Origin: Mizuhopecten yessoensis
Taxonomy: Eukaryota
DNA: 53,321 nucleotides
Direction of reading: 5' to 3'
Assembly (NCBI RefSeq): GCF_002113885.1
Contig: NW_018404544.1
Span: forward strand, 82,395 to 135,715
This document shows, in pieces, positions 16,450 through 53,321 of this stretch. The notes beneath the pieces are model-generated. The model made no database searches, had not been told where the DNA came from, and worked only from the letters and a program-made list of their open reading frames with translations. Position numbers and translations under genes: made by a program. How positions within the stretch are numbered: position 1 is the stretch's first letter; the number at the start of each line of letters is the position of its first letter.

Positions 16450-18510
16450 TTTGTTAATCAGTGACAGACCTACCGTAAATACGTTTATTAGTGACAGACC
16501 TACCTCAAATATGTTTATCAGTGACAGACCTACCTCAAATAAAATATGTTTATCAGTGACAGACCTACCTCAAATATGTTTATCAGTGACAGACCTACCT
16601 CAAATATGTTTATCAGTGACAGACCTACCTCAAATATGTTTATTAGTGACAGACCTACCGTAAATACGTTTATCAGTGACAGACCTACCTCAAATATGTT
16701 TATCAGTGACAGCCTTACCTCAAATATGTTTATCAGTGACAGACCTACCTCACATATGTTTATTAGTGACAGACCTACCACAAATATGTTTATTAGTGAC
16801 AGACCTACCTCAAATATGTTAATCAGTGACAGACCTACCTCAAATAAAATATGTTTATCAGTGACAGACCTACCGTAAATATGATTATCAGTGACAGACC
16901 TACCTCAAATATGTTTATCAGTGACAGAACTACCTTAAATATGTTTATTAGTGACAGACCTACCTCAAATATGTTTATCAGAGACAGTCCTACCTCAAAT
17001 ATGTTTATTAGAGACAGTCCTACCTCAAATATGTTTATTAGTGACAGTCCTACCTCAAATATGTTTATTAGTGACAGCCCTACCTCAAATATGTTTATTA
17101 GTGACAGACCTACCACAAATATGTTTATTAGTGACAGACCTACCTCAAATATGTTTATCTAACAGACCTACCTCAAATATGTTTATTAGTGACAGCCCTA
17201 CCTCAAATATGTTTATCTAACAGACCTACCTCAAATATGTTTATTAGTGACAGACATACCGTAAATACGTTTATCAGTGACAGACCTACCTCAAATATGT
17301 TTATTAGTGACAGACATACCGTAAATACGTTTATCAGTGACAGACCTACCTCAAATATGTTTATTAGCGACAGTCCTACTTCAAATATGTTTATTAGTGA
17401 CAGACCTACCTCAAATATGTTAATCAGTGACAGACCTACCTCAAATATGTTTATCTAACAGACCTACCTCAAATATGTTTATTAGTGACAGTGACAGACC
17501 TACCTCAAATAAAATATGTTTATCAGTGACAGACCTACCGTAAATATGATTATCAGTGACAGACCTACCTCAAATATGTTTATTAGCGACAGTCCTACCT
17601 CAAATATGTTTATTAGTGACAGCCCTACCTCAAATATGTTTATCTAACAGACCTACCTCAAATATGTTTATTAGTGACAGCCCTACCTCAAATATGTTTA
17701 TTAGTGACAAACCTACCTCAAATATGTTTATCAGTGACAGACCTTCCTCAAATAAAATATGTTTATCAGTGACAGACCTACCGTAAATATGATTATCAGT
17801 GACAGACCTACCTCAAATATGTTTATTAGCGACAGTCCTACCTCAAATATGTTTATTAGTGACAGCCCTACCTCAAATATGTTTATCAGTGACAGACCTA
17901 CCTCAAATATGTTTATCAGTGACAGCCTTACCTCAAATATGTTTATCAGTGACAGAACTACCTCAAATATGTTTATCAGTGACAGCCCTACCTCAAATAT
18001 GTTTATTAGTGACAGTCCTACCTCAAATATGTTTATTAGTGACGGACCTACCTCAAATATGTTAATTAGTGACAGACCTCCCTCAAATACGTTTATTAGT
18101 GACAGACCTACCTCAAATATGTTAATCAGTGACAGACCTACCTCAAATATGTTTATCAGTGACAGAACTACCTCAAATATGTTTATTAGTGACAGACCTA
18201 CCTCAAATATGTTAATTAGTGACAGACCTACCTCAAATACGTTTATTAGTGACAGACCTACCTCAAATATGTTTATTAGTGACAGTGCTACCTCAAATAT
18301 GTTTATTAGTGACAGACCTACCTCAAATATGTTTATCAGTAACAGTCCTACCTAAAATATGGTTATCAGTGACAGACCTACCTCAAATATGTTTATCAGT
18401 GACAGACAGACCTCAAATATGTTTATTAGTGACAGACCTACCTCAAATATGTTTATCAGTGACAGTCCTACCTAAAATATGGTTATCAGTGACAGACCTA
18501 CCTCAAATGT
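16450..18510. repeat. 30-bp minisatellite, ~68 copies, anchored on the COMMD5 exon 6 donor
   Basis: Unit atgtttatcagtgacagacctacctcaaat. Confidence 0.97.
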
Positions 18511-18577
18511 GTGGATCCTGCCATCACTAAGAGTCAGCTCCATGAGAATACTTGGTTCCAACACTCTGTTTAAAACA
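18502..18577 (-). CDS. COMMD5: COMMD5 coding exon 6
   Basis: (S)VLNRVLEPSILMELTLSDGRIHTFE. Acceptor ttctttcag, donor GAG|GTAGGT. Confidence 0.92.
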
Positions 18578-18938
18578 CTGAAAGAAAATCAAGAGATTAT
18601 AAGGATGCCATTTATACAGTTGTCTCCTTAAAGGATCAGCGCCCATAATAATAAAACAAGAGGCCCAAGGGCCTAAACGGTCACCCAAGTTATATTTTAG
18701 GTAGCTTAATTTCATTGCTGAGATGTGAAGTGGAAATCAGCATACAAACATAGTGAAATACAATACTTGTTATGTCGCCAAAGGAAAAGAACTTTAAAAA
18801 CTATTCAAAAAAAATATTTTGCTATGGAGAAATATAATATCTATTGTCATGGGAAGGACGGTGTGTGAAGAGGAAGTTTGGTTAGGGCTACAAATATACT
18901 ACCTACAGTAAAGTATTGTAACATTGATCATGGCCTAC

Positions 18939-19034
18939 CTGGTAGATATGGCTACATCAACTCTCCACTTGAGACAATCTAATCTGGGTAGTCGTGGTCT
19001 GTTCTCTAGACAGTGTGCGGTGATCTGTGGCCCC
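18939..19034 (-). CDS. COMMD5: COMMD5 coding exon 5
   Basis: (R)GPQITAHCLENRPRLPRLDCLKWRVDVAIST, containing the COMM-domain WRVD motif. Confidence 0.92.
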
Positions 19035-19830
19035 CTTCAAAAAACAACAGAATTATTGATTCACCAAACAAGGATAGTTTCATAGGCACGGGCAAAAACT
19101 ACATGAATTGCCTGGAATTGACTTGATTTCCACAAGGAATTTCTTTCACTGTTCCAAACAAGCAACAATTCTTTATTTGCCTAGCCGACACCTATCTCAA
19201 GATATAGGGTACACTGCCATACTTCGTGTACACCCATACTTCACGAGCCAAGACACACATGCACACCTGAATCTGGTCACCCCAGGTGAATTAGTATAAA
19301 AGATGTGCCCCGAACACTTTAAAAGGATAAGCTCAAATGTCAAAGCATAGGTCACGGTAACCTACTTTTTGTTTTTGACACTCCATCATCCCAGGATGTT
19401 CATGCATACAACATCTGGTTACTCCAGCTGAAATAGTATAAATGCTATGTCCCAGTAAATGTTTCCAAAGGTTTAGTTCAAAGGTCAAACTATAGGTCAC
19501 AGTGACCTTTGTTTTGTAAATTCCTAACCTGTGTATTTATGGTGAAATAGTATAGGAAATCGAAATATACCTTGGACTAACTCTTTGGATCGACAGAAGG
19601 ACATATAGACAGGAACCAGTGGGGAACTAATAAACACTACAACAGTTTATTCAGGGCTGCTAGAGACTTATAATTATATTATCATACATTCTTGTGTGGT
19701 CTTAAAAAGACCTACAATGTATCCTTTCAATATAACATAGTAATTATTTGTACCAGTCATGTTTTTAGCACGGAACTCGTTGACACTCAAATCACAGTAG
19801 CGATAGCGTACATCCCTGAGGACGACTCAC

Positions 19831-19881
19831 CTTGAACCAAAGATAACACTAGCAAGATCACTGTGGAACTCTTCAGGAATG
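19831..19881 (-). CDS. COMMD5: COMMD5 coding exon 4
   Basis: (N)IPEEFHSDLASVIFGS. Sites ttacag / AG|GTGAGT. Confidence 0.9.
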
Positions 19882-20974: not shown

Positions 20975-21003
20975 TTTAATTCCTTTATGTCCTCCTTGAA
21001 CAT
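20975..21003 (-). CDS. COMMD5: COMMD5 coding exon 3 (29 nt)
   Basis: MFKEDIKEL. Sites ttgcag / AA|GTGAGT; phases fit both neighbours. Confidence 0.85.
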
Positions 21004-21161
21004 CTGCAAATTTGAAATACAAAATTCTAAAAAAATATAATATTTATATAAACAATGTTTTTATTCACAAACCTGTAGATTTGGAAATCAAAGAAGATTA
21101 CAATAAAACATGTACCTACAGTCTGTACACACACACACACACCTATATACATGTACATTTA

Positions 21162-22065
21162 ACAAGAGGCCCAGAGGGCCTGTAGCGCTCACCTGGATAT
21201 CAAAGTAATCATGGCAAAATATTCTCCAAATAAGATCCAAAGGAATGGGCCAGACCCCAAGGACAATCCTTGTATCCTATCTGTATTAGATTTTTCATAC
21301 CCAGCAATATTATGTATGGTTATGGGGTGGGGATCTCAACTGTTTCCAAGGTGTGACTCAGAAATTAAGTCCCTAGGGTTGTGGCCAGACCCCAGGATTA
21401 ATTATAATATCATGACTGCATTCGTATCTTTATGCCCAACAATTGTATATATAGTTTTGGGGTAGGGATCTTAACCGTTTTAAAGTTATGACCCATGGGT
21501 TAGGTCTCAAAGGGTGGGGCAGACTCTGAAATCAATTCTAATATCATGACTGCAATCGTCTCTTTATCCCCAGCATTTGTATATACAGTTTTGGGGTGGG
21601 GATCTCAACCGTTTCAAAGTTATGACCCAGGGACTATGTCTCCAAGGGTAGGGCCAGACCCCTGGGCAATCCTGGAAACATATGTGCATTCTTCTCTTGG
21701 GGATCTCAACCATTTCCAAAGGGGCTCTGCCCCACTACTTGTACAATTTGAATCCCTGCCTCCCATGATATCCAGTGCATTAGTTCTACAGAAGATGCCA
21801 TTTATAGCAATATAGCCAAATTACCCTTTTTGGTCATGCCCCTTGGCCCCCTGGGGGTCAGCCCTCCATTTGTAAAATTTTGAATCCCCACCTCTCATGA
21901 ATGCTTCTGACCAAATACGATTGATATCCAGCGTATAGTTCTACAAAAGAAGTCATTATAGCAATATATCCAAATAACCTTTTGGCCCCGCCCCTCAGCC
22001 CCCTTGGGGGTCAGCCCCACCATTTGTACAATTTTGAATCCCCACTACCTAGCTAGGGATGCTTC
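21162..22065 (+). mobile_element. HINE-like element, right end abutting the 38-bp array
   Basis: acaagaggcccagagggcctgtagcgctcacctgg end; internal ggggtggggatctcaac units. Confidence 0.7.
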
Positions 22066-23594
22066 ACACTTTACCTCTGGTTTTATCATAGATATCACAT
22101 AAGCCACTTTACCTCTGGTTTTAACACCTTACCTCTGGTTTTATCATGGATATCACATAACACACTTTACCTCAGCTGGTTTTATCATAGATATCACATA
22201 ACACACTTTACCTCTGGTTTTATCATAGATATCACATAGCACACTTTACCTCTGGTTTTATCATAGATATCACATAACACACTTTACCTCTGGTTTTATC
22301 ATAGATATCACATAACACACCTAGCCTCTGGTTTTATCATAGATATCACATATAGCACATACATTTTACCTCTGGTTTTATCATAGATATCACATAACAC
22401 ACTTTACCTCTGGTTTTATCATAGATATCACATATAGCACATACACTTTGCCTCTGGTTTTATCATACATATCACATAACACACTTTACCTCTGCTGGTT
22501 TTATCATAGTTATCACATAACACACTTTACCTCTGGTTTTATCATAGATATCACATAGCACACTTTACCTCTGGTTTTATCATAGATATCACATAACAAA
22601 CCTAGCCTCTGGTTTTATCATAGATATCACATAACACACTAAACATCTGGTTTTATCATAGATATCACATAACATATCTTACCTCTGGTTTTATCTTAGA
22701 TATCACATAACACACCTTATCTCTGGTTTTATCATAGATATCACATATAGCACATACACTTTGCCTCTGGTTTTATCATACATATCACATAACACACTTT
22801 ACCTCTGGTTTTATCATAGATATCACATAACATACTTTTCCTCTGGTTTTATTATAGATATCACATATAGCACCATTACCTCTGGTTTTATCACAGATAT
22901 CACATACCACACCTTACCTCTGGTTTTAACACCTTACCTCTGGTCTTATCATAGATATCACATAACACACTTTACCTCTGGTTTTATCATAGATATCACA
23001 TAACACACTTTTCCTCTGGTTTTATCATAGATATCACATAACACACGTTACCTCTGGTTTTATCATAGATATCACATAACACACTTTACATCTGGTTTTA
23101 TCATAGATATCACATAAAACACTTTACCTCTGGTTTTGTCATAGATATCATATAACACACTTTACTTCTGGTTTTATATATATCACATAACACTTTTCCT
23201 CTGGTTTCATCACAGATATCAAATAACACACAACCTCTGATTTTAACACCTTACCTCTGGTTTTATCACAGATATCACATAACACACTTTACCTCTGGTT
23301 TTATCATAGATATCACATATAGCACATGTTACCTCTGGTTTTATCACAGATATCACATAACACACTTTTTCTCTTGTTTTATTATAGATATCACATATAG
23401 CACACGTTACCTCTGGTTTTAACACCTTACCTTTGGTTTTATCATAGATATCACATAACACACCTTACCTCTGGTTTTATCATAGATATCACATAACACA
23501 CTTTACCTCTAGCTTTATCATAGAAATCCTGTAACATAGTTTACTTCTAGCTTAATCATAAAAATCCTGTAACATAGTTTACCTCTGGTTTTAA
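22066..23594. repeat. 38-bp minisatellite, ~40 copies, anchored on the COMMD5 exon 2 donor
   Basis: Unit acacactttacctctggttttatcatagatatcacata. Confidence 0.96.
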
Positions 23595-23743
23595 CGATGT
23601 CAGTGGCAGTCGAATTGCCCGTCTCAGTAGGGAGTACAAGCCAGTATAAACTATACTCAACACTTCCTTGGTGAAGATGTCATGTTCTAATTCCTCTAAT
23701 ACTGCACAATCAATTTCCTTTCCTTCCATAGAGGACACAATCA
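23583..23743 (-). CDS. COMMD5: COMMD5 coding exon 2
   Basis: (M)IVSSMEGKEIDC...LYSLLRRAIRLPLTSLKPE. Sites gtttcag / GAG|GTAAAC. Confidence 0.92.
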
Positions 23744-24197: not shown

Positions 24198-24858
24198 TGA
24201 AAGGAAGGAAGGAATGAAGGACAGGTGATGACCCTGGAAAACAGGTAGGTCAGTACAGGCAATCACCTTTGAAAGAAGGTAGGACAAGTGATGACCTCTG
24301 AACTAAAGTAAGATAGGTGATGACCCTGGAAGGCTGGTAGGACAAGCAATGAAAGAAGGTAGGATAGGTGATTACCCTTGAAGGAAGGTAGGACAGGTAA
24401 TGACCCTTGAAGAAAGGTAGGACATGTGATGACCCTTGAAAGAAGGTAGGACAGGTGATGACCCTTAAAGGAAGGTAGGACATGTGATGATCTTTGAAGG
24501 AAGGTAGGACATGTGATGACCCTTGAAGGAAGGTAGGACATGTGATGAACTTTGAAGGTAAATAGGACAGGTGATGACCCTTGAAAGAAGGTAGGACAGG
24601 TGATGACCCTTGAAAGAAGGTAGGACAGGTTATGACCATTGAAGGAGGGGAGGACAAGCAATGACCCTTGAAGGAAGGTTGGACATGTGATTATCTTTGA
24701 AGGAAGGTAGGACAGGTGATGACCCTTGAAGGAAGGTAGGACAGGTGATAACCCTTGAAGGAGGGGAGGACAGATGTTGACAATTGAAGTAAGTATGATG
24801 GGTGATGTTCCTTGAAGGAAGGTAAAACAGACGATTACCTTTGAAGGCAGGTAGGTCA
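24198..24858. repeat. 29-bp purine-rich minisatellite in COMMD5 intron 1
   Basis: Unit gaaggaaggtaggacaggtgatgaccctt. Confidence 0.92.
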
Positions 24859-25334: not shown

Positions 25335-25482
25335 TTTGCAACAATTTACGAAAAGTTTGTTTGTCAATCTTTGCCATAGGTTTGCTGATGGCTTTGATTT
25401 CCTGGGGCACTCTCCCACCATAAAACGGTGATCTGTCCACTGCTACACTGCCCCCGCTTCCCTTCACTTGAATAATGGACAT
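25335..25482 (-). CDS. COMMD5: COMMD5 coding exon 1
   Basis: MSIIQ..FYGGRVPQEIKAISKPMAKIDKQTFRKLLQ resembles COMMD5 FLGAQLPPEV..LDRSTFRKLL. Donor A|GTAAGT. The seven exons total 663 nt. Confidence 0.9.
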
Positions 25483-28119: not shown

Positions 28120-28279
28120 TACCAAGGTAAGTTAATGGGTCAGTGCTGATGTACCAAGGTAAGTTAATGGGTCAGTGCTGATGTACCAAGGTAAGTTAAT
28201 GGGTCAGTGCTGACGTACCAAGGTAAGTTAATGGGTCAGTGTTGATGTACCAAGGTAAGTTAATGGGTCAGTGCTGATG
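28120..28279. repeat. 32-bp minisatellite, 5 copies
   Basis: Unit taccaaggtaagttaatgggtcagtgctgatg. Confidence 0.95.
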
Positions 28280-30052: not shown

Positions 30053-30088
30053 TTTGCAATAATTTTAACATGTGTTTTGTGTTTGCAG

Positions 30089-33819: not shown

Positions 33820-34722
33820 AGACTGAACATGTGTCAGTCAGATAATGAGTGACTGAACTAGTATGGATGAACGTGTGTCAGTCAGATAATTAGTGACTGA
33901 ACTAGTATGGATGAACATGTGTCAGTCAGATAATGACTGACTGAACTAGTATGGATGAACGTATGTCAGTCAGATAATGAGTGACTGAACTAGTATAGAT
34001 GAACGTGTGTCTGTCAGATAATGAGTGACTGAACTTCTGTGGATGAACGTGTGTCAGTAAGATAATGAGTGACTGAACTAGCGTGGCTGAACGTGTGTCA
34101 GTCAGATAATAAGTGACTGAACTAGAATGGATGAACGTGTGTCTGTCCGATAATGAGTGACTGAACTACCGTGGATGAACGTGTGTCAGTCATATAATGA
34201 GTGACTGAACTAGTAGTATGAACGTGTGTCAGTCAGATAAGGAGTGACTGAACTACTGTGGATGAACGTGTGTATCAGTCAAATAATGAATGACTGAACT
34301 AGTATGGATGAACGTGTGTCAGTCAGACAATGAGTGACTGAACTAGTAGGATGAACGTGTGTCAGTCAGATAATGAGTGACTGAACTACTGTGGATGAAC
34401 GTGTATCAGTCAGATAATGAGTGACTGAACTGCTGTGGATGAACGTGTGTATCAGTCAAATGATGAATGACTGAACTAGTATGGATGAACATGGGTCAGT
34501 CAGATAATGAGTGACTGCACTACTGTGGATGAACGTGTGTATAAGTCAAATAATGAATGACTGAACTAGTCTGGATGAACGTGTGTCAGTCAGATGATGA
34601 GTGACTGAACTAGTATGGATAAACGTGTGTCAGTCAGATAATGAGCGACTGAACTAGTATGGATGAACGTGTGTTTGTCAGATAATGAGTGACTGAACTA
34701 CTGTGGATGAACGTGTGTCAGT
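33820..34722. repeat. 44-bp minisatellite, ~20 copies
   Basis: Unit gataatgagtgactgaactagtatggatgaacgtgtgtcagtca. Confidence 0.95.
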
Positions 34723-35013
34723 TACAGTCAACACCTGTTCTGTAGAATTAACATGGCTGCCCACATTCGCTGACAATACATCCAGCTTCTTTCAGATAAC
34801 TAGATTAATATACATCCAGCTTCTTTCAGATAACTAGATTATTATACATCCAGCTTCTTTCAGATAACTAGATTATTATATATCCAGCTTCTTTCAGATA
34901 ACTAGAGTATTATACATCCAGCTTCTTTCAGATAACTATATTATTATACATCCAGCTTCTTCCAGATAACTAGCGTATTATACATCCAGCCTCTTTCAGA
35001 TAACTAGATTATT

Positions 35014-36650
35014 AGCTCACCTGGTCCAGCTCAGCCATACCGTGGCGTCCGTCGTCCGTCCGTTCTTCCGTACGTCAACAATTTCTTTAAACGACTTCTT
35101 CTTCTTAACCACTGGTTGGAATTAAACTAAATTTGACTGGAAGCATCCCTAGGTGGTGGGGATTCAAAATTGTACAAATGGTGGGGCTGACCCCCCAGGG
35201 GGCTGAGGGGCGGGGCCAAAAGGGGCCAATTTGCCCATATTGCTTTAAGCGACTTCTTCTCTGAAACTAAGAAGTGGATATCAACCATATTTGACTGGAA
35301 GCATCCCTAGGTGATGGTGATTAAAAATTGTACAAATGGTTGGGCTGACCCCCCAGGGGGCTTAGGGGCGGAGCCAAAAGGGGGCAATTTGGCTATATTG
35401 CTACAAACGACTTCTTCTGAAGAACTGTGCACTGGATATCAATCATATTTGATCAAAAGCATTCCTGGGAGGCAGGGATTTAAAATTGTACAAATGGTGT
35501 GGCTGACCCCCCAGGGGGCTGAGGGGCAGGGCCAAAAAGGGTATTTGGCTATACTGCTTTAAGCGACTTCTTCTCTGGAACTAAGAAGTGGATATCAACC
35601 ATATTTGACTGGAAGCATCCCTAGNNNNNNNNNNNNNNNNNNNNNNNNNNNNNNNNNNNNNNNNNNNNNNNNNNNNNNNNNNNNNNNNNNNNNNNNNNNN
35701 NNNNNNNNNNNNNNNNNNNNNNNNNNNNNNNNNNNNNNNNNNNNNNNNNNNNNNNNNNNNNNNNNNNNNNNNNNNNNNNNNNNNNNNNNNNNNNNNNNNN
35801 NNNNNNNNNNNNNNNNNNNNNNNNNNNNNNNNNNNNNNNNNNNNNNNNNNNNNNNNNNNNNNNNNNNNNNNNNNNNNNNNNNNNNNNNNNNNNNNNNNNN
35901 NNNNNNNNNNNNNNNNNNNNNNNNNNNNNNNNNNNNNNNNNNNNNNNNNNNNNNNNNNNNNNNNNNNNNNNNNNNNNNNNNNNNNNNNNNNNNNNNNNNN
36001 NNNNNNNNNNNNNNNNNNNNNNNNNNNNNNNNNNNNNNNNNNNNNNNNNNNNNNNNNNNNNNNNNNNNNNNNNNNNNNNNNNNNNNNNNNNNNNNNNNNN
36101 NNNNNNNNNNNNNNNNNNNNNNNNNNNNNNNNNNNNNNNNNNNNNNNNNNNNNNNNNNNNNNNNNNNNNNNNNNNNNNNNNNNNNNNNNNNNNNNNNNNN
36201 NNNNNNNNNNNNNNNNNNNNNNNNNNNNNNNNNNNNNNNNNNNNNNNNNNNNNNNNNNNNNNTCATGACATTAGAATTGATCCCAGGGTCTGCCCCACCC
36301 TTGCAGACTTGGCCCCTGGGTCATAACTTTGAAACGGTTGAGATCCCCACCCCAAAACTATATATACAAATGCTTGGCAAAAAGAGACAAATGCAGTCAC
36401 GATATTAGAATCGATCCTGGGGTCTGGCCACAACTCTAGGGACCTAGTTTCTGAGTCAAAGCTTGGAAACAGTTGAGATCCCCACCCCATAACCATACAT
36501 AAAATTTCTGGGCATGAAAAATCTAATATAGCTATGCTACAAGGATTGGCCTTAGGGTCTGGCATATTCCCTTGATCTCATTTGGAGAATAGTTTGCCAT
36601 GATTGCTTAGGTATCCAGGTGAGCGATACAGGCCCTGTGTGCCTCTTGTT
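35014..36650 (-). mobile_element. Two-ended HINE-like element spanning the second gap
   Basis: agctcacctgg plus cgtc microsatellite at left; ccaggtgagcgatacaggccctgtgtgcctcttgtt at right. Confidence 0.8.
35625..36262. other. Assembly gap
   Basis: Run of N. Confidence 1.
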
Positions 36651-37584
36651 ATACATCCAGCTTCTTCCAGATAACTAGAGTATTATACAACCAGCTTCTT
36701 TCAGATAACTAGATTATTATGCATTCAGCTTCTTTCAGATAACTAGATTATTATACATCCAGCTTCTTTCAGATAACTAGAGTATTATACATCTAGCTTC
36801 TTTCAGATAACTAGAGTATTCTAATCCTTTGATCAATAACAAGTGAATACCCCGAGTGGCAGCAAAGCTGTAAAACTAGGGCGAAATAGGAAACAAATTA
36901 GACCAAGCGTTCAAGGGTGAACATCTTGCTTCATCGACAACACCTGCCACGTAAATCTAGGTCAAATCCAGGTAATGTCACGTCCTCGCAATGATAACTC
37001 GGATGATTAAAAAAATATAAAGTCACACTTATGACCAATAACATCGATGTTCATATGACTGTGATTCACAAAGAAAAAATATATCCTATGAGATCATGAT
37101 GGTACCCATGAAACTTGTTCTTATTCTTCATCAACCTGTATCTAGGGAAACCGTGTGCTGTTTGTCAGCAGTCAACATCTGTCCTGTAAAGCACAAACCA
37201 AACAAACAACCAACCAGAATGCAACTTGCTAAATATCACCACCCTGTACCTTTTGTTTATTGAGAAGATGACGTTTAAAGATTTATGCATAATTGACCAG
37301 ATGTGACCTTGAAAGTGTGTCGAGGTCATTCACATGAACAAAAATAACCCTGGACGTTTGGTTAATCAGAAGAAGTCGTTTAAAATGTCAACATATTTTA
37401 CCCCTGTGACCTTGAATATGGTAAAAAGTAATTAATTTGAACAAACTTTGTAAATCTTCATCCCAACATACTTCTACCCGAATATAATCACCCTAGACAT
37501 TTGGTTATACAGAAGAAGTTGTTTGAAGTTTTTAGACAATTGACCCAAGTGACCTTTAATGTGGGCGAAGATTATCTATTTGAA

Positions 37585-38243: not shown

Positions 38244-39445
38244 ACAAGAGGCCCAGAAGGCCTGTATGGCTCACCTGTATCTTTATGCCCAGCAAAGGTA
38301 TATATGGCTATGGGTTCACAGGATCTCAACCATTTCAAAGTTATAGCCCAGAAATTAAGGCCCCAAGGCCCCACAATAGGCAATACTAATATCATAACTG
38401 TGTTCGTCTCTTGTTGCCTAGCAATGGTATACATGGTAATGGGGTGGGGATCTCAACCGTTTCAAAGTTATAACCCAATACGTAAGTCCCTAGATCTAGA
38501 GGTGGAACCCGACCCCAGGGTCAATTATTAAATATGACAGTGTTTATATCTTTATGCCTGTCAAATCTATATATGGTTGTGGGGTTGGGTTCTTAACATT
38601 TTCAAAGCCATGGCCCAAAAAGAAAGTCCCTGGGGGTAAGGCCAGACCCAAGATTCAATATTAATATCATGATTGGGTTCGTCTCTTGATGTGCAGCAAT
38701 GGTATATATGGTTGTGGGGTGGGAATCTCAACAGTTTAAAAGTCATGTCTCATGAATGAAGTTCCAAGGGGTGGGGGCCATACCAATCGGTAAATTATAT
38801 CATCATGACTGTATTAATCTCATTATGGCTACCAGATGTATATACGGTTATGGGGTGGGGATCTCAACTGTTTAAAAGTTATGGCTCAGGAATTAAGTCT
38901 CTATTGGTGGGGCCGTTTCAAAGTTATGGCTTAGAAATCAAGTCCCTAGGGGTGGGGCCAAACTCCAGCGTCCATTCTTATATCATGATTGTGTTTGTCT
39001 CTTGATGCTCAGCCATTGTTTACTTGGTTATAAGGGTGGGGATCTCGATAATGTCCTAGTTAACATTTCTTTGGTCCCTCCCCTCAGACCCAAGGGTCAG
39101 CTGGGTCAATTTTGAATCCTGAACCACCGAAGAATGTTCCCAATCAAATATGGATGATATTCGTCACTTTGTTCCAGAGAAAAAGTCGCTTTAAGCAATA
39201 TGACAAAATAACCCATTTTGGCCCCACCTCTCAGCCATGAGAAGAGCCACATCCTCCTTTCATACATAAGGGAATTCCTCTTGCCAAAGGATATTCTAGA
39301 CAAAATTTGGTTAAAACACCTCTATTTGTACAGAAGGAGAAATTTTTTAAATGATTTACCTAAATTCACCCTATTAGGACCCCACCCTTCTGCCCCAGGG
39401 GGCCTCATCCTCTATTTTAATAAAATTTAGTCCTCTTTGCCAAAA
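38244..39445 (+). mobile_element. HINE-like element
   Basis: acaagaggcccagaaggcctgtatggctcacctg; ggggtgggatctcaac units. Confidence 0.65.
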
Positions 39446-42400: not shown

Positions 42401-42645
42401 ATAGTGGTTCATTCCGGTTTACATTTTTACTTCTAATTCTTCATACCAATCAATATACCTACCACTTTTATAAAGAATATAATATTTTCTTTTCTATACT
42501 GGTCTACGAATTAAAATCCATTAAGTATTAAGGAACATATGACTTTTTTAAATATAAAATTCATTTAAAATCTCTTCAAGCCTGAGTGTGTTCCGGGATT
42601 TGTCCTCGCCCACCAGTTAAGCGTTTTCGTGAGGCAGGATTAAAG

Positions 42646-42808
42646 ATGGAAGTCGCCCCGAAAGATCGACGATTTTATTCCCTTCCCGAGAAAGAGAAAC
42701 ACGTGGATTTGTCTGGAAGTACCAAAACTGACAGTTTGATCAGATACATCTCTGAAAATATCATCGGCAATGACAAAGTGTTCAGTGGACCATATGGTTT
42801 AAGGAAAG
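42646..42808 (+). CDS. Class-V aminotransferase / cysteine desulfurase-like gene, exon A (start uncertain)
   Basis: ..LIRYISENIIGNDKVFSGPYGLRK; donor G|GT. The frame is also open upstream of this ATG. Confidence 0.8.
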
Positions 42809-43572
42809 GTGCTGCTTTAAGAACGTTTTTAAAATAGTAAATAATGCAATATCGGGTGATCAGTTTCTGAGCCCTTGGGTGAAAAAGGATCTTTCCATGC
42901 TTTTTATAATCTAATAAAATGGAAATAGCAGAAATGCTTCTTTTCTACTTGCATTTGAGGACGAATTGTTTTGACTTCTTTTTCACCTCATTTTCTTAAA
43001 AGTCCATGCAGATGTAACCTAAATGTTTACTCACGCTACTAACAAAAACAATGATGTCAATAAACTTGTTGTATCTGCTCTACCCAATGCACAAAATTCC
43101 ACACAAGGCATAGAAACCTGTACAGCTCAGAAACTGATCTTACGATGATATGGTTGAAGTGCAATCAGTCATAGGATTATACAACAGTGTACAAAGGAAT
43201 CTCAAAATGTGAGAACACATTGGGCATTCAAAGGAATTCCCAAACTTTTCAAGAAGTCTGTTTTGTTTTGTCATAAACAAAAACGAATGAATACTATCAT
43301 GTGAATCTAGTCATAAATTAAGAGAGAAAGACGAAATATGGTAAAATAAATGTAAACGTATAAGAACATTCTGGATGATTAGTTTTGACAGGGTGTTAAT
43401 TTAAACAGACCCTGGGATCAAATTTAGAAAAACATTATTGGCATGAATTATTTATCTAGCACTTAAACACACTTGTATTGTTCCACCAGTGCTAGCCATG
43501 GCCAACATTTTTCTAGTTATTCTTGTGTAAGATAAAAATATTTTTCTTATGACTGTGCTTTTTGTGTTTCAG

Positions 43573-43603
43573 TGACCTACTTGGATTACACTGCATCAGG
43601 AAG
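43573..43603 (+). CDS. Cysteine desulfurase-like gene, exon B (31 nt)
   Basis: (V)TYLDYTASG(R), the class-V YxDxxAS motif. Sites tttcag / AG|GTAATT. Confidence 0.9.
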
Positions 43604-45477
43604 GTAATTGTACACCCTCAGCTCCTCTGTTTGCTATCATTTTTATCTAGTAATAAGCTAAGGTGATTGTTAACCCTCAGCTCCTCTGTTTACTGTCATT
43701 TTTATCTAGTAATAAGCTAAGGTAATTGTACACCTTCAGCTCCTCTGTTTACTATCATGTTTATCTAGTAATAGGCTCAGGTAATTGTACACCCTCGGCT
43801 CCTCTGTTTACTATCATGTTTATCTAGCAATAAGCTAAGGTGATTGTACACCCTCAGCTCCTCTGTTTGCTATCATTTTTATCTAGGAATAAGCTAAGGT
43901 AATTGTACACCCTCAGCCCCTCTGTTTACTATCATGTTTATATAGTAATAAGCTAAGGTAATTCCCCCCCCTCAGCTCCTCTGTTTACTATCATGTTTAT
44001 CTAGTAATAGGCTCAGGTAATTGTACACCCTCGGCTCCTCTGTTTACTATCATGTTTATCTAGTAATAGGCTCAGGTAATTGTACACCCTCGGCTCCTCT
44101 GTTTACTATCATGTTTATCTAGTAATAGGCTCAGGTAATTGTACACCCTCGGCTCCTCTGTTTACTATCATGTTTATCTAGTAATAGGCTAAGGTAATTG
44201 TACACCCTCAGCTCCTCTGTTTACTATCATGTTTATCTAGCAATAAGCTAGGGTGATTGTAAACCCTCAGCTCCTCTGTTTACTGTCATTTTTATCTAGT
44301 AATAAGCTAAGGTAATTGTACACCTTCAGCTCCTCTGTTTACTATCATGTTTACTATCATGTTTATCTAGTAATAGGCTCAGGTAATTGTACCCCCTCGG
44401 CTCCTCTGTTTACTATCATGTTTATCTATTAATAGGTTAAGGTAATTGTACACCCTCAGCTCCTATGTTTACTATCATGTTTATATAGTAACAGGCTAAG
44501 GTAATTGTACACCCTCAGCTCCTATGTTTACTATCATGTTTATATAGTAATAAGCTAAGGTGATTGTACACCATCAGCTCCTCTGTTTACTATCATGTTT
44601 ATCTAGTAATAGGCTCAGGTAATTGTACACCCTCGGCTCCTCTGTTTACTATCATGTTTATCTATTAATAAGTTAAGGTAATTGTACACCCTCAGCTCCT
44701 CTGTTTACTATCATGTTTATCTAGTAATAAGCTAAGGTGATTGTACACCCTCAGCTCCTCTGTTTACTATCATGTTTATCTAGTAATAAGCTAAGGTAAT
44801 TGTACACCCTCAGCTCTTCTGTTTACTATCATTTTTATCTAGTAATAAGCTAAGGTGATTGTACACCCTCAGCTCCTCTGTGTCCTGTAATAAGCTAAGG
44901 TAATTGTAAACCCTCAGCTCCTCTGTTTACTATCATTTTTATCTAGTAATAAGCTAAGGTGATTGTACACCCTCAGCTCCTCTGTTTACTATCATGTTTA
45001 TATAGTAATAGGCTAAGGTAATTGTACACCCACAGCTCCTCTGTTTACTATCATGTTTATATAGTAATAAGCTAAGGTGATTGTACACCCTCAGCTCCTC
45101 TGTTTCCAGTAATAAGCTAAAGTAATTGTACACCCTCAGCTCCTCTGTTTACTATCATGTTTATCTAGTAATAAGCTAAGGTAATTGGAATTCCCTCAGC
45201 TCCTCTGTTTACTATCATGTTTAAATAGTAATAAGCTAATTAAAGGTAATTGTACACCCTCAGCTCCTCTGTTTACTATCATGTTTATCTAGTAATAAGC
45301 TAAGGTAATTGTACACCCTCAGCTCCTCTGTTTACTATCATGTTTATCTAGTAATAAGCTAAGGTAATTGTACATCCTCAGCTCCTCTGTTAACTATCAT
45401 GTTTATCTAGTAATAAGCTAAGGTAATTGTACAACCTCAGCTCCTCTGTTTACTATCATGTTTATCTAGTAATAAGC
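43601..45477. repeat. 59-bp minisatellite, ~32 copies, anchored on the exon B donor
   Basis: Unit gtaattgtacaccctcagctcctctgtttactatcatgtttatctagtaataagctaag. Confidence 0.97.
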
Positions 45478-45647
45478 CCTTGTCTGTTATAAAGCCCATC
45501 CATGTAACAAATAGTTCATGACAAGTAAAAATGTTATTTCATTGTCAACAGCAAGCCTCTGAATATATATAGATATGTTGTCTCAATGGCAAGATAAAGA
45601 TAATCTGTAAATGAATTTATTACCTAAGACAGAAAATATAGCTTGAC

Positions 45648-46548
45648 TAGAAATCTGGTCCTAGCAGAAAGGTCATTGGGTGGTTAAATAGACATCCGGT
45701 CCCAGCAGAAAGGTCATTGGGTGGTTAAATAGACATCTGGTCCCAGCAGAAAGGTCATTGGGTGGTTATATAGACATCTGGTCCCAGCAGAAGGGTCATT
45801 GGGTGGTTAAATAGACATCTGGTCCCAGCAGAAAGGTCATTGGGTGGTTAAATAGACAAGTGGTCCCAGTAGAAAGGTCATTGGGTGGTTAAATAGACAT
45901 CCGGTCCCAGCAGAAAGGTCATTGAGTGGTTAAATAGACAAGTGGTCCAAGTAGAAAGGGCATTGGGTGGTTAAATAGACATATGGTCCCAGCAGAAAGG
46001 GCATTGGGTGGTTAAATAGACATCTGGTCCCAGCAGAAAGGTCATTGGGGGGTTAAATAGACATCTGGTCCCAGCAGAAAGGGCATTGGGTGGTTAAATA
46101 GACATCTGGTCCCAGCAGAAAGGGCATTGTGTGGTTAAATAGACATCAGGTCCCAGCAGAAAGGTCATTGGGTGGTTAAATAGACATCTGGTCCTAACAA
46201 AAAGGTCATTGGGTGGTTAAATAGACAAGTGGTCCCAGTAGAAATGTCATTGGGTGGTTAAATAGACATCGGTCCCAGCAGAAAGGTCATTTGGTGGTTA
46301 AATAGACAAGTGGTCCCAGTAGAAAGGTCATTGGGTGGTTAAATAGACATCTGGTCCCAGCAGAAAGGGCATTGGGTGGTTAAATAGCCATCTGGTCCCA
46401 GCAGAAAGGGCATTGGGTGGTTAAATAGACATCTGATCCCAACAGAAAGGTCATTGGGTGGTTAAATAGACATCTGGTCCCAGCAGAAAGGGCATTGGGT
46501 GGTTAAATAGACATTTGGTCCCAGCAGAAAGGGCATTGGGTGGTTATA
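45648..46548. repeat. 41-bp minisatellite, ~22 copies
   Basis: Unit tagacatctggtcccagcagaaaggtcattgggtggttaaa. Confidence 0.95.
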
Positions 46549-47406
46549 GTTAGTTTCGGTTTCTAGACTAGTTTTAGATTAATAAAGTTGAAGTTATTAT
46601 GTACTTTTAAAGGAAGAAATACCACTGAGTTTTAACAACAATTCACAGTATTACATTCTAGTGTTATAGTTTGTTTTGTGTGTCTGCAGCATCTGCAGAA
46701 AGTTTTTTTTAACCAAATCTGAAAATTTACATGGCCGCCAGCAGACATCTTTAATTAAGTAAAAAGTCATTTGGGTTTTATGAAACTTTCTGCATATGCT
46801 AATATTAATTATCGTACCCAGGGGAATTCTGACACAAATTTTGAAATACATGAAGACGAACAGGACCAGATGACACATTCATGTTCATAGAACTCTTGAT
46901 CCAGTTTCAAAGAGATAAAGAAATTTCAATCATAAACACCACCACTGAAAGTGCTGAAATGAAAAAAACAGAATCACAAAATGTATTTGAAGCCAAAATC
47001 CGGGGGATGACTCATAATAAAACCATTCTCATCTTTCATGCTACGTGTACATGTATATATGGGGCTTATTGGATTGAACTGAACAGCAGAAGGAAGGGGT
47101 TGAGAACGTCAATACTGATTGTACAAGACAAGCTAGCTCAGGCGGAACCCTTAGATTTAAAAATAGACCTGTTCTTTTCCGCATAATAAACATGCCATTG
47201 TGACACTTCAGTTTACTTATACATGTGCATCAGATTTATAATGTTTTACAATAGGAAATGCTTGTCAGTATTGCTTAAGTTTACTGAAAATCACCTGGGA
47301 ACTATCATCAACAGGAGCCCATCTTTATCAGTTGGTACTCACCTTTAACTGGTAATGTAAGGTTTATATTCGAGTTGAATAGCAAATATTGTTTTATAAA
47401 TTGTAG

Positions 47407-47523
47407 GGGATTGAAGTTCATTGAAGATTACATAGAGAATGAAGTATTACCTGACTATGGAAACACACACACCACTACAAGTATCACCTCTCTCCAGACA
47501 ACTCTGTACAGACATGAGGCCAG
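47407..47523 (+). CDS. Cysteine desulfurase-like gene, exon C
   Basis: GLKFIEDYIENEVLPDYGNTHTTTSITSLQTTLYRHEA(R). Confidence 0.9.
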
Positions 47524-47761
47524 GTACGACTTGTTTTACTATCACCTCATTTGTTTGATGGTTTATATGCAATAATACAGTTAAGTTGTTGGAACATAAA
47601 CCATAAAGAATAAGCGTTTTTCACAAGAAATGAAATTTGATTTCCCAAGTGTAGCTCTTTTAAATGAAAGGCATTTGACAAAGAACTCCAGCAGATGTGT
47701 TAGTGGATACACCAGTGACAGAGGAGGGAACACAATGTTCACAGACAGATTGCGGGAGTGT

Positions 47762-47930
47762 ATGCTTTTGGTTTGTTTATGTTTTACGTCCTATTAACAG
47801 CTACGTGCCAGGTTTTGGTGGTGGAGAAAAGCCGGAGTTCCCAGAGAAAAACCACGGACCTAAGACCAGTACGTACCTGGCGACTGCCCCATGTAGGTCT
47901 CGATTCCGCGACCAAGTGGTGGAGGGCTCC
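47762..47930 (-). mobile_element. V-domain-like SINE fragment
   Basis: ccggagttcccagagaaaaaccacggacct resembles the reverse complement of the V-SINE core; ttggtttgttt tail. Confidence 0.55.
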
Positions 47931-48018
47931 TAAGAAATTTATGCTGTAATTCTGTATAAAGAGTAATACATCGTGATATGCAGTTTATCCAGCTGAATCA
48001 GCATGTTTTGGTTTACAG

Positions 48019-48136
48019 GGACATTGTGCGGAATGCTGTACATGCCGGTGAGCATGACTCTGTGATATTCTGTGGGAATGGAACCACTGCCGCCATCCAC
48101 AAACTCATTCATGCCCTAAACCTAAGGGAGCCTCCG
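48019..48136 (+). CDS. Cysteine desulfurase-like gene, exon D
   Basis: DIVRNAVHAGEHDSVIFCGNGTTAAIHKLIHALNLREPP. Confidence 0.9.
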
Positions 48137-48588
48137 GTACGATTATCCTAGAGTGTTTCTGTGTGTGTNGGTGGGGGAGGGGTGGGGAGGTGTTTAGAAA
48201 CATTATCAACAGTCACTAATATACATACATTTTTTGAAAGAATTCACTTTAACTGTTAATACAATGCAAATTGAATATCAGTATAAGGTAATGTAAACTT
48301 AATGTAATCATGATACCTACACACGATGACGATCAGGTCATCTTAGCAGCAGCTTCTCTGTGTAGCTTATTTCTGAAGTATTTATGTTACCAATATTTCC
48401 ATAGCATACCTTACTTTGATATCAACTTTAAACTTAATGCAGTTCATTCTGTTTTATTTTACGTATTATAACTTAATTAACAGTAAACATATACATATAT
48501 ATCTCATAGTGTCAATGAGCTTACAATTTAAATGGTGGCATTCCAGTGAAAGTCTTTTTTCACTTATATCTAATAATTTCTGTTTTAG

Positions 48589-48654
48589 GTTGTATTTGTC
48601 AGTCCATACGAACATCATTCCGTTCTGCTGCCATGGAAGGAACAAGGTGCTAAG
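48589..48654 (+). CDS. Cysteine desulfurase-like gene, exon E
   Basis: VVFVSPYEHHSVLLPWKEQGAK, containing the EHHS..LPW motif. Confidence 0.92.
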
Positions 48655-49149
48655 GTACATCTTGGAAGTCCATTGTCCATCTGCTGTCTTCCATCAACAT
48701 TTTACTTTCAACAATTTCTTCTGACCCACATTCAAGGTCACAGGGGTCAAATTTGTTTAAACCTTTTAAACAACTTCATAATGTTTGACCCCAGTGACCT
48801 TGAAAGAGGGTCAAGGTCACTAATTTGAATAAACATAGTAGCCTTTTATCTCGGTATGCTATTGACCAAATACCATCACCCTAGGCCGCTTGGTTGTTTT
48901 TATTTGATGCTTTGCCTTACACATTGATTTCAATTGAAAACTTGAAATTAAGTATATTATGGTTCAGAAAATGGTAAAATGTTGACTTTGTATCATTGAA
49001 AATTAAGTCCACCTGATGCCATTTAGTGGTAACATTACAGAATTGTTTTCTTTCAAATTTCATATTTTCAATAATAATGACTCGAGTTTGGTGTAGTTAA
49101 TCACTCAGAATTGGTCACGATACTACATTATCATTTAGCAATTTGGACC

Positions 49150-49822
49150 TGCTGTTAACAACACTATTTCATTTATTGGATGTATGAACTGTACTGGTGA
49201 GCTTAGGCTGTACTGTGGCGTCCATCGTCCGTCGTCCGTCGTCTGTCTGTTAACAACACTATTTCATTTATTGGATGTATGAGCTGTACTGGTGAGCTTA
49301 GGCTGTACTGTGGCGTCCATCGTCCTCTGTCTGTCCTCTGTCTGTCCTCTGTCTGTTAACAACACTATTTCATTTATTGGATGTATGAGTTGTACTGATG
49401 AGCTTAGGCTGTACTGTGGCGTCCATCGTCCGTCGTCTGTCTGTTAACAACACTATTTCATTTATTGGATGTATGAGTTGTACTGGTGAGCTTAGGCTGT
49501 ACTGTGGTGGCCATCGTCCGTCGTCTGTCCTCTGTCTGTTAACAACACTATTTCATTTATTGGATGTATGAGTTGTACTGGTGAGCTTAGGCTGTACTGT
49601 GGCGGCCATCGTCCGTCATCTGTCCTCTGTCTGTTAACAACACTATTTCATTTATTGGATGTATGAGTTGTACTGGTGAGCTTAGGCTGTACTGTGGCGT
49701 CCATCGTCCGTCGTCTGTCTGTTCACAACACTATTTCATTTATTGGATGTACGAGTTATACTGGTGAGCTTAGGCTGTACTGTGGCGTCCATCGTCCGTC
49801 GTCTGTCCTCTGTCTGTTGACA
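49150..49822. repeat. 88-107-bp tandem array, ~7 copies, containing a HINE-like terminus
   Basis: aacaacactatttc...gagcttaggctgtactgtggcgtccatcgtccgtcgtctg repeated. Confidence 0.9.
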
Positions 49823-50191
49823 ATTCCTTAAAATGACTACTTCTAAACCGCTGATTAGAATTTGATAATATTTGATTGGAAGCAGGGTGGGTTGAGGGTG
49901 GCGAGCTGTGGCAGGGGGGACGGGGTAATTTGGCCATATTGCTTCAAGCAACTTCTTCTCTGGAACTAACCATAAGTACATTTGATAGGCATACAGAGAT
50001 AAAAACAGTCATGATGCTAGAATTTACACTGAGGTCTGCCCCACCCCTAGGGACTTTATTTCCAGACCATAACTTTGAAATGATTGAGATCCCCAATCAA
50101 TAGCAATAAATACCATCGCTAGGAAAAAAGGTCCAGGTAAGTGATACAGACTCTCCTGGACTTCTTGTTATGAATTGTTAAAATTGTTAGT

Positions 50192-50421
50192 GTCAATTCC
50201 ATAGTTATCCTTGTTTATGTCATTCCAGGTACTTAGGGTAAATTCCATAGCTATCCTTGTTTATGTCATTCCAGGTACTAAGGGTCAATTCTACAGCTAT
50301 CCTTGTTTATGTCATTCCAGGTTCTTAGGGTCAATTTCACAGCTATCCTTGTTTATGTCATTCCAGGTACTTAGGGTCAATTTCACAGCTATCCTTGTTT
50401 ATGTCATTTCAGGTACTTAGG
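50192..50421. repeat. 46-bp minisatellite, 5 copies, anchored on the exon F acceptor
   Basis: CAG|GT with the G of AG at 50228, 50274, 50320, 50366 and 50412. Confidence 0.95.
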
Positions 50422-53289: not shown

Positions 53290-53321
53290 GTAGTACATCT
53301 GTCACCACTTACTGTGTTAAT

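What the first reader, a model, noticed from the sequence alone, without database searches (positions are those of the whole stretch)
16450..50421. Recurrent splice-junction-seeded minisatellites: real AG|GT splice sites amplified into the adjacent intron
Seen: four arrays with unrelated sequences and units (30, 38, 59, 46 bp) each end exactly on a phase-consistent junction in two genes: COMMD5 exon 6 donor, COMMD5 exon 2 donor, desulfurase exon B donor and exon F acceptor. Each unit includes 3-11 nt of exon, so the splice site is repeated 5 to ~68 times. All four junctions are AG|GT, so each unit reads GT...AG. Rough hand estimate: ~28 array ends and ~31 junctions in 53 kb give ~0.5 expected coincidences within 15 bp, against 4 observed. 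Established: tandem duplication of AGGT-containing sequence is a proposed route to intron gain, and AG|GT is the recursive-splice motif. Inference: a process may target exon-intron borders for tandem amplification (splicing-coupled DNA damage or R-loops, or rolling-circle copying of small DNA/RNA circles), or junction arrays are selectively tolerated. I do not know whether this has been reported for this lineage.
Basis: partly seen in the sequence, partly recalled or inferred. Interest (0 to 1): 0.85.

Follow-up and report, generated by a model that had tools for sequence, protein, structure and literature searches.

The report
Splice-junction minisatellites ("mirages") in a bivalve
Four intronic minisatellites in two genes of a scallop-like bivalve are tandem copies of the genes' own exon-intron junctions, a structure already named "mirage" in amphioxus, and 5' splice-site sequences are strongly over-represented in this genome's minisatellites.

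Summary
Four unrelated arrays (30, 38, 59 and 46 bp units) overlap real junctions by 11, 11, 3 and 14 nt. The junctions are the COMMD5 exon 6 and exon 2 donors, and the exon B donor and exon F acceptor of a class-V aminotransferase/TtcA-like gene. Homologue coordinates run continuously across every junction.

In the window, 4 of 7 intronic arrays touch a junction, against 0.4-0.65 expected (P about 4e-4 to 2e-3).

Genome-wide, triple tandem perfect donor 9-mers (AAGGTAAGT, CAGGTAAGT) give 1416 and 2218 matches. Six control 9-mers of similar composition give 86-436. Two acceptor 9-mers show little or no excess.

The arrays are locus-specific and young. The Tegillarca orthologue has the same introns and no arrays. 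Pinctada and Saccostrea orthologues carry their own donor-spanning arrays at other exons.

The kind is already known: "mirages" in amphioxus and the human F7 intron 7 VNTR. I found no report for molluscs in the held library, nor of a donor bias. The cause of the bias is untested.

The AG|GT point, the rolling-circle idea and the intron-gain idea are not supported. First readers of this scan noted the same thing on many other pieces of this genome.

The parts
16447..18512 (-). 30-bp x 68 minisatellite. On the minus strand the unit is the intron start GTAGGT... plus the last 7-11 nt of exon 6 (...ATTTGAG).
   Evidence: TRF; sequence; unit segmentation (62/68 units start with GT). The unit is found only at this locus in the genome, apart from one weak 76% match.
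18502..18577 (-). COMMD5 exon 6; it ends in phase 0 at GAG|GTAGGT.
   Evidence: Pfam COMM_domain positions 21-48 for this exon and 1-18 for exon 5. The translation continues into exon 7 (IPVAKFHELRY...), read.
22065..23593 (-). 38-bp minisatellite (about 40 units, some shortened to 20 bp). The unit is the intron start GTAAAG... plus the last 11 nt of exon 2 (TAAAACCAGAG).
   Evidence: TRF; sequence. The two units nearest the exon are the most diverged.
23583..23743 (-). COMMD5 exon 2; it ends in phase 0 at GAG|GTAAAC.
   Evidence: It aligns end to end with human COMMD5 residues 55-107, ending ...SLKPD (PDB 8p0w_E).
20975..21003 (-). It fixes intron 2 at 21004-23582.
   Evidence: Splice-site and frame scan. 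The match to the human stretch TFRDQLQELC is from my memory of the human protein, so this exon is probable, not proven.
43573..43603 (+). Exon B (31 nt, VTYLDYTASGR) of the class-V aminotransferase/TtcA-like gene; donor AAG|GTAATT.
   Evidence: tblastn of homologues gives contiguous coordinates. Tegillarca protein P0059 residues 27-37 match exon B, 37-76 match exon C and 76-116 match exon D. Argopecten protein P0206 residues 60-70 match exon B at 100% identity.
43601..45477 (+). 59-bp x 32 minisatellite that starts 3 nt before the exon B donor GT. It also shows 118- and 177-bp higher-order periods.
   Evidence: TRF; sequence (25/32 units start with GT).
50187..50426 (+). 46-bp x 5.2 minisatellite that ends 14 nt inside exon F. 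Every unit carries ...TCATTCCAG|GTAC.
   Evidence: TRF; sequence.
50413..50478 (+). Exon F (VLRIKEDQHGCVCLADLTAKLQ); acceptor CAG|GT.
   Evidence: Octopus protein P0076 residues 142-164 match exon F, lying between exon E (121-143) and exon G (165-222). Argopecten P0206 residues 170-192 also match it.
24208..24855 (.). Comparator: a 29-bp intronic array in COMMD5 intron 1, 464 and 479 nt from the two junctions.
45648..46546 (.). Comparator: a 41-bp intronic array in intron B, not at a junction.
49152..49823 (.). Comparator: an 88-95-bp intronic array in intron E, not at a junction.
35625..36262 (.). Assembly gap in intergenic repeat sequence. It is not part of any junction array.

Best explanation
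These are 'mirage'-type minisatellites.

Origin. Four times independently, a short stretch of DNA (30-59 bp) that straddled a working splice junction was duplicated in tandem. It was then expanded inside the intron by the usual minisatellite processes, replication slippage and unequal exchange. Because the founding unit held the exon's last (or first) few bases plus the splice signal, every copy is a decoy splice site.

Tolerance. The gene survives because the authentic site is the copy next to the exon: the first donor in line, or the last acceptor. Any decoy that was used would add sequence with a premature stop.

Age. The arrays are young, lineage-specific additions to old introns.

Genome-wide. 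Units holding a 5' splice site are far commoner among minisatellites than chance allows. Either duplications that include a donor arise or expand more often, or they are kept more often.

Shown: the anatomy, the identity of the junctions, the local excess, the genome-wide donor-motif excess, locus specificity for the one unit tested (30 bp), and absence from one orthologue. Inferred: the slippage or exchange mechanism, which site the spliceosome uses, removal of mis-spliced RNA, and the cause of the bias.
For: - Array coordinates and overlaps with exons.
- Junctions validated by homology: Pfam COMM_domain positions 1-18 and 21-48 on exons 5 and 6; human COMMD5 residues 55-107 on exon 2; contiguous homologue coordinates over exons A-G.
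- In the window, 4 of 7 intronic arrays sit on junctions against 0.43-0.65 expected; P = 4e-4 to 1.7e-3.
- Array (c) is a whole number of units in the register that starts 3 nt inside the exon. That is what a simple DNA duplication gives.
- The edge units of (b) are the most diverged, as in ordinary minisatellites and in the amphioxus globin mirages (PMC3087553).
- The 30-bp unit occurs only at this locus in the genome.
- The Tegillarca orthologue has the same exons B-G, a 740-bp intron B and no arrays.
- Pinctada (84 bp x about 10; 76 nt of exon plus GTAAGTGA) and Saccostrea (70 bp x 6.9) orthologues carry donor-spanning arrays at other exons of the same gene, in chromosome-scale assemblies.
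- Genome-wide triple-tandem counts: AAGGTAAGT 1416 and CAGGTAAGT 2218, against controls of 86, 154, 160, 166, 224 and 436. The listed donor hits come from 16-18 loci per 100 rows, with almost all units unrelated.
- Decoys match the donor consensus as well as the real sites or better. The first unit after each donor brings an in-frame stop (read).
- The F7 IVS7 experiments show that the most upstream of identical tandem donors is the one chosen (PMC1557585).
Against: - No transcript data, so use of the exon-proximal sites and silence of the decoys are inferred.
- The genome-wide test counts matches, not arrays. Single large arrays inflate the counts (one control array gave about 96 matches). 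It also does not show that the donor-bearing arrays abut real exons.
- The window was picked out by a reader, so the local P-value is after the fact.
- Copy numbers in a gapped assembly may be wrong.
- A neutral duplication model does not explain the size of the donor excess or the lack of an acceptor excess.
Confidence: 0.8

Rival explanations
1. A mutational process tied to 5' splice sites creates or expands the arrays. Polymerase pausing, U1 snRNP binding or R-loops at donors in germline-expressed genes would stall replication and provoke template switching. Each added donor would add instability. This rivals only the cause of the excess, not the anatomy.
For: The excess is specific to donors genome-wide, with little or none for acceptors (against 62, 64). 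In this gene the mirages found in other bivalves are all on the donor side. Only real junctions, not random sense-strand AGGT sites, head the arrays in this window.
Against: The share of the unit that is exon ranges from 0.05 to 0.9 (3 of 59 nt here, 76 of 84 in Pinctada). Breakpoints therefore do not cluster at the junction. There are no data on expression, R-loops or mutation rate. One acceptor array exists here, and first readers note others elsewhere (unchecked).
Confidence: 0.25
2. A selective filter explains the excess. Tandem duplications arise everywhere in transcribed DNA. Arrays persist and grow mainly when each unit carries a U1-binding 5' splice site, for instance because U1 suppresses premature cleavage and polyadenylation in AT-rich repeats. 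Donor-side decoys would be harmless under first-donor choice, while acceptor-side decoys are harmful.
For: The donor/acceptor asymmetry. The wide spread of breakpoints around a shared feature, a donor in the unit. Some 30-bp units contain AATAAA and the 59-bp unit contains AATAAG just downstream of the decoy donor. First-donor choice is shown for F7 (PMC1557585).
Against: The AG|GT core of the copies is no better conserved than the rest of the unit (0.067 against 0.044 divergence in the 30-bp array; 0.012 against 0.041 in the 59-bp array). Three intronic arrays in this window have no strong sense-strand donor and still persist. U1 protection is known from vertebrates; its role in molluscs comes from my own knowledge and is untested.
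Confidence: 0.2
3. Chance plus reader selection. In a genome packed with minisatellites, some arrays will touch exons, and a reader looking for patterns will find them.
For: About 15 minisatellite arrays lie in 53 kb. The window was flagged after the fact. With long units the chance of spanning a junction is not small (up to 0.2 per array).
Against: P = 4e-4 to 1.7e-3 even under the generous seed model. There is an independent genome-wide donor-motif excess. Independent cases exist in Pinctada and Saccostrea. Many first-reader notes describe the same thing on other pieces (unchecked leads).
Confidence: 0.04
4. RNA-mediated origin. Small GT...AG circles or lariats cut from the intron start are reverse-transcribed by rolling circle, and the product is recombined back into the gene.
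For: Every unit can be read as GT...AG. The 59-bp unit shares only AAG with the exon.
Against: Units (a), (b) and (d) carry 7-14 nt of specific exon sequence upstream or downstream of the splice point. The oyster arrays carry 53-76 nt of exon. A mini-intron model predicts none. Introns of 30-46 nt would be very short for a metazoan spliceosome (my own knowledge).
Confidence: 0.03

Closest known systems
Amphioxus 'mirages': minisatellite-like tandem duplications of exon/intron boundaries in Adh3, globins BflGb6 and BflGb9, troponin C and PGBD5 (Canestro et al. 2002 as cited in PMC3087553 and PMC3902484)
   Same: The tandem units span an exon-intron boundary and carry AG/GT signals. Both 5' and 3' boundaries can be affected. 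Unit sizes overlap (Adh3 10-72 bp). The edge units escape homogenisation. The arrays sit beside the authentic exon.
   Different: The phylum differs: here a pectinid-like bivalve, plus Pinctada and Saccostrea. Amphioxus has RT-PCR evidence of normal splicing and evidence of length instability; neither is available here. To my knowledge no genome-wide excess or donor bias has been reported for amphioxus, and the held library has none.
Human F7 intron 7 37-bp VNTR (PMC1557585)
   Same: The first unit spans the exon 7 donor. The authentic donor is followed by identical 5' pseudo-sites. The unit length is similar to those here.
   Different: It is a single human locus of a few units. The silence of the pseudo-sites and 5'-to-3' scanning were shown by experiment there; here they are only inferred.
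Intron gain by tandem duplication of an AGGT-containing segment (e.g. potato RdRp, PMC4974935)
   Same: A duplication that includes AG|GT creates extra splice signals.
   Different: No new intron is created here. The introns are at positions shared with Tegillarca, Argopecten and Octopus proteins.
Recursive splice sites (AG|GT ratchet points)
   Same: Each unit boundary reads AG|GT.
   Different: Ratchet points are single conserved sites in very long introns. These are young arrays, absent from an orthologue, and no usage data exist.
Introner elements (transposon-borne introns)
   Same: Repetitive sequence that carries splice signals inside genes.
   Different: Introners are dispersed multicopy families. 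The 30-bp unit is confined to its own locus, and the four units are unrelated to one another.

Membership tests
Mirage (exon/intron-boundary minisatellite) | Head-to-tail repeat of minisatellite unit size | tested here: met
   30, 38, 59 and 46 bp units with 68, about 40, 32 and 5.2 copies.
Mirage (exon/intron-boundary minisatellite) | The unit contains the end of a real exon, its splice signal and the adjoining intron sequence | tested here: met
   Overlaps of 11, 11, 3 and 14 nt with exons validated by homology.
Mirage (exon/intron-boundary minisatellite) | Regular splicing is not disturbed | not testable with these tools
   No transcript data. The only indirect point is that reading frames stay intact if the exon-proximal sites are used.
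Mirage (exon/intron-boundary minisatellite) | Length instability or polymorphism between alleles | not testable with these tools
   There is a single assembly. Higher-order periods (118 and 177 bp) and deletion variants hint at turnover.
F7-type donor VNTR | The first unit spans the donor, which is followed by identical pseudo-donors | tested here: met
   Arrays (a), (b) and (c). Decoys match the donor consensus as well as the real donors or better.
Intron gain by tandem duplication | The intron is absent at that position in relatives | tested here: not met
   The same exon boundaries B through G occur in Tegillarca, and homologue coordinates are contiguous in Argopecten and Octopus.
Introner / dispersed repeat family | Many copies of the same element at unrelated loci | tested here: not met
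   A whole-genome search with the 30-bp array found only its own locus plus one weak 76% match. The other three units were not searched.
Recursive splice site | A conserved AG|GT used as an intermediate splice point | tested here: inconclusive
   The motif is present. The arrays are not conserved in Tegillarca. Usage cannot be tested here.

The most novel reading that the evidence does not exclude
In bivalves, a process that depends on a 5' splice site being inside the repeat unit, either a splicing-coupled mutation bias or selection for U1-binding units, makes exon donor junctions a major birthplace of minisatellites. Hundreds to thousands of genes would then carry tens of full-strength decoy donors that the spliceosome ignores.
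Probability: 0.35. Interest if true: 0.8.

Novelty: new member of a known kind. Interest (0 to 1): 0.6.

Why it matters
If the donor bias holds up against annotation, it gives a natural genome-scale experiment on two open questions. The first is how the spliceosome picks one 5' splice site out of dozens of identical ones in a row. The second is whether transcription or splicing leaves a mutational footprint on DNA. It would also explain part of the unusual minisatellite load of bivalve and amphioxus genomes. It matters in practice as well: such arrays mislead gene predictors and short-read assemblers, and they are likely to be hypervariable markers inside genes.

Tried and rejected
1. Sampling 1-2 Mb of the genome for a tandem-repeat and open-frame test. 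I did not try to obtain the letters by another route. I used pattern counts instead.
2. Naming the organism from the LONRF-like exon. The hits had no names. The taxon came from homologue names instead. Per-exon identity to the Argopecten irradians protein is 74-100%, higher than to Tegillarca on most exons.
3. Pfam on single short exons gave nothing for exons 1, 2 and 7 of COMMD5 or for exons A-F of the second gene. I used PDB and homologue tblastn instead.
4. A look-alike of COMMD5 exon 3 at about 20830 was rejected for lack of an acceptor. The real candidate is 20975-21003.
5. Orthologous loci of Argopecten and Mya were not on record.
6. The original mirage paper (PMC117041) is not held. It is cited only through PMC3087553 and PMC3902484.
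7. Selection on the decoys was looked for and not found: AG|GT is no more and no less conserved than the other unit positions.
8. Rejected readings: rolling-circle mini-introns, intron gain, introners, special status of AG|GT, and assembly-gap involvement (see the rivals and the membership test).
9. The C. elegans CeRep25B paper (PMC4039745) and the abalone paper (PMC6905558) proved irrelevant.

Full report
**What the window is.** It is invertebrate nuclear DNA, AT-rich and crowded with minisatellites; TRF gave 50 rows, about 15 distinct arrays with units of 25-95 bp. It is not human.

It lies at C1217:82395-135715 of a 987.6-Mb assembly in 82,659 contigs. Proteins of the plus-strand gene are most similar to a protein named for Argopecten irradians, at 74-100% identity per exon. 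They are also close to one from Tegillarca granosa (the accession was resolved through bioRxiv 10.1101/2024.07.29.605683). The organism is therefore a pteriomorph bivalve, most likely a scallop. The assembly size and contig count fit my memory of the Yesso scallop assembly, which I could not verify.

COMMD5 is on the minus strand. Its exons are:
- exon 1: 25335-25482
- exon 2: 23583-23743
- exon 3: 20975-21003
- exon 4: 19831-19881
- exon 5: 18939-19034
- exon 6: 18502-18577
- exon 7: 15164-15263

Exon 2 aligns end to end with human COMMD5 residues 55-107. Exons 5 and 6 match COMM_domain positions 1-18 and 21-48.

The plus-strand gene encodes a fusion of a class-V aminotransferase and a TtcA-like PP-loop domain (PF00266 plus PF01171 in its homologues). 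Exon G alone reaches PF00266 positions 144-189. Its exons are:
- A: 42646-42808
- B: 43573-43603
- C: 47407-47523
- D: 48019-48136
- E: 48589-48654
- F: 50413-50478
- G: from 53108

Homologue coordinates run without a break across every junction. Examples are Tegillarca protein P0059 residues 27-37, 37-76, 76-116 and 116-138, then 160-217; Octopus protein P0076 residues 142-164 for exon F; and Argopecten protein P0206 residues 60-70 and 170-192.

The four arrays overlap their exons as follows.

| Array | Unit | Overlaps | By |
|---|---|---|---|
| 16447-18512 | 30 bp | COMMD5 exon 6 donor | 11 nt |
| 22065-23593 | 38 bp | COMMD5 exon 2 donor | 11 nt |
| 43601-45477 | 59 bp | exon B donor | 3 nt |
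| 50187-50426 | 46 bp | exon F acceptor | 14 nt |

The units are unrelated to one another. GT is kept in 62 of 68 and 25 of 32 units of the two arrays that segment cleanly. Among the 7 minisatellites that lie in introns of these two genes, 4 touch a junction. The expectation is 0.43 if each array is slid within its intron, and 0.65 if a one-unit seed is dropped uniformly.

**The assembly gap.** The N run at 35625-36262 sits between the two genes, inside tandem copies of a transposon-like element. The same 34-bp array flanks it on both sides in direct orientation. It affects no exon and no junction array. It only leaves the distance between the genes uncertain. I did not try to fill it.

**Anatomy of the arrays.**
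- The 59-bp array starts 3 nt inside exon B and ends within 1 nt of a whole number of units. A plain DNA duplication of one segment would leave exactly this.
- The 46-bp array begins and ends on a 10-nt near-repeat (TTAGTGTCAA and TTAGGATCAA), one copy in the intron and one in the exon. This looks like microhomology at the founding event.
- In the 38-bp array, the two units next to the exon are the most diverged. Amphioxus globin mirages show the same edge effect (PMC3087553).
- The AG|GT core of the copies is neither better nor worse conserved than the rest of the unit. I see no sign of selection for or against the decoys.
- The decoys match the donor consensus as well as the authentic sites or better.
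- If a decoy were used, an in-frame stop would follow: at the end of the first 30-bp unit, at the ninth codon of the first 38-bp unit, at once in the 59-bp unit, and just past one 46-bp unit (read).
- The 30-bp unit is confined to its own locus in the genome.

**Genome-wide test.** I could not fetch more of the genome. I therefore counted places where the same 9-mer occurs three times in a row at a 24-54 bp period. The tool adds the reversed pattern as a control.

| 9-mer | Type | Matches | Reversed control |
|---|---|---|---|
| AAGGTAAGT | donor | 1416 | 86 |
| CAGGTAAGT | donor | 2218 | 166 |
| AAGTGAAGT | same-composition control | 160 | 154 |
| AGATGAGTA | same-composition control | 436 | 224 |
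| TTTTTCAGG | acceptor | 39 | 140 |
| TTTTACAGG | acceptor | 598 | 237 |

About 96 of the 436 AGATGAGTA matches come from one array. Several of the listed TTTTACAGG hits are really ACAG|GTRAG donors.

Counts are of matches, not arrays. The first 100 rows of each donor search already cover 16-18 separate loci, with almost all units unrelated. On a rough scaling, the donor 9-mers sit in a few hundred arrays each and the cleaner control in a few tens. Perfect 5' splice-site sequence is therefore strongly over-represented in this genome's minisatellites. Acceptor sequence is not. This test does not show that those arrays abut real exons.

**Other species.**
- The Tegillarca orthologue has the same exons B-G but a 740-bp intron B (3803 bp here) and no junction arrays. 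The scallop arrays are therefore young additions to old introns.
- The Pinctada orthologue has an 84-bp array of about 10 units, made of 76 nt of the end of the exon G equivalent plus GTAAGTGA.
- The Saccostrea orthologue has a 70-bp x 6.9 array made of about 53 nt of exon end plus a GTAGAC donor.
- Mercenaria, Tegillarca and Branchiostoma lanceolatum have none in this gene.

Taken together, the exon's share of the unit runs from 0.05 to 0.9. What the arrays share is a donor inside the unit, not a breakpoint at the junction.

**Interpretation.** The best-supported account is local tandem duplication across a working junction, followed by ordinary minisatellite expansion. It is tolerated because the exon-proximal site stays in use. 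The F7 work shows that, among identical donors in a row, the most upstream is chosen (PMC1557585).

The cause of the donor excess is open. A splicing- or transcription-coupled mutation bias and a selective filter for units that bind U1 both fit the donor/acceptor asymmetry. I could test neither.

Several readings are not supported:
- The AG|GT point is uninformative (9 of 11 donors in these genes are AG|GT).
- The rolling-circle mini-intron idea is contradicted by the exon sequence inside the units.
- Intron gain is contradicted by the conserved intron positions.
- Introners are contradicted by locus specificity.

**What is known.** The structure has been described as 'mirages' in amphioxus Adh3, globin, troponin C and PGBD5 genes, where it was called possibly a general phenomenon in cephalochordates (PMC3087553, PMC3902484). 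It is also known as the F7 intron 7 VNTR in humans (PMC1557585). The held library has no report for molluscs and no genome-wide analysis. The library lacks most subscription journals.

First readers of this scan noted the same thing on many other pieces of this genome, including acceptor cases. Those notes are unchecked leads.

**Verdict.** This is a real feature and a correct observation. It is a known kind in a new lineage. The new quantitative point, the donor-specific excess, needs annotation and RNA data to be settled.

Noticed in passing
window 28120-28279: A 32-bp x 5 array in which every unit holds a perfect CAAG|GTAAGT donor. It lies about 120 nt downstream of a TATA-like CTATATAA at about 28000, in the 17-kb stretch between the two divergently oriented genes. 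It could mark the donor of an unannotated non-coding first exon. That would make it a fifth junction array.
   Followed up: partly
L003:7112-7962 (Pinctada imbricata) and L004:14729-15215 (Saccostrea echinata): Orthologues of the aminotransferase/TtcA-like gene carry their own donor-spanning arrays at other exons: 84 bp x about 10 and 70 bp x 6.9. Most of each unit is exon sequence.
   Followed up: yes
window 48654/48655 and 50412/50413: Intron E begins AAG|GTACAT, and the exon after it begins CAG|GTACTT. Both ends of the intron therefore read AG|GTAC. This may be chance given the splice consensus.
   Followed up: no
window 4762-5844, 21319-22045, 35131-35624, 38568-38959, 49876-50100, 51468-52480: A short interspersed element of about 135-160 bp, with a G/C-rich box (GGGGCTGAGGGGCGGGGCC or its complement), recurs in both orientations. 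It often forms short tandem runs, including inside introns and next to the junction arrays.
   Followed up: no
window 34708-35084 and 36583-36891: One 34-bp minisatellite appears on both sides of the transposon run that holds the N gap, in direct orientation. Either it is an array split by an insertion or it is an assembly duplication.
   Followed up: partly
window 1702-2340 (minus): First coding exon of a LONRF-like protein (TPR plus RING finger). The best exon-level homologues are 60-65% identical, and the gene runs off the left end of the window.
   Followed up: partly
window 2736-4164 and 8635-9795: Open frames that look transposon-derived: broken minus-strand ORFs (2736-4164) and an intact 386-aa ORF of unknown family (8635-9795).
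   Followed up: no
window 42646-53321 and homologues: The 'desulfurase' is the N-terminal half of a conserved metazoan fusion of a class-V aminotransferase and a TtcA-like PP-loop ATPase of about 1000-1250 aa. It is mostly annotated as uncharacterised.
   Followed up: partly
window 16447-18512 (minus): The 30-bp unit is a multiple of three, and most copies are stop-free in the exon's frame (VGLSLINIFE). Only the TAG at the end of the first unit, and scattered variants, would stop read-through from exon 6.
   Followed up: partly
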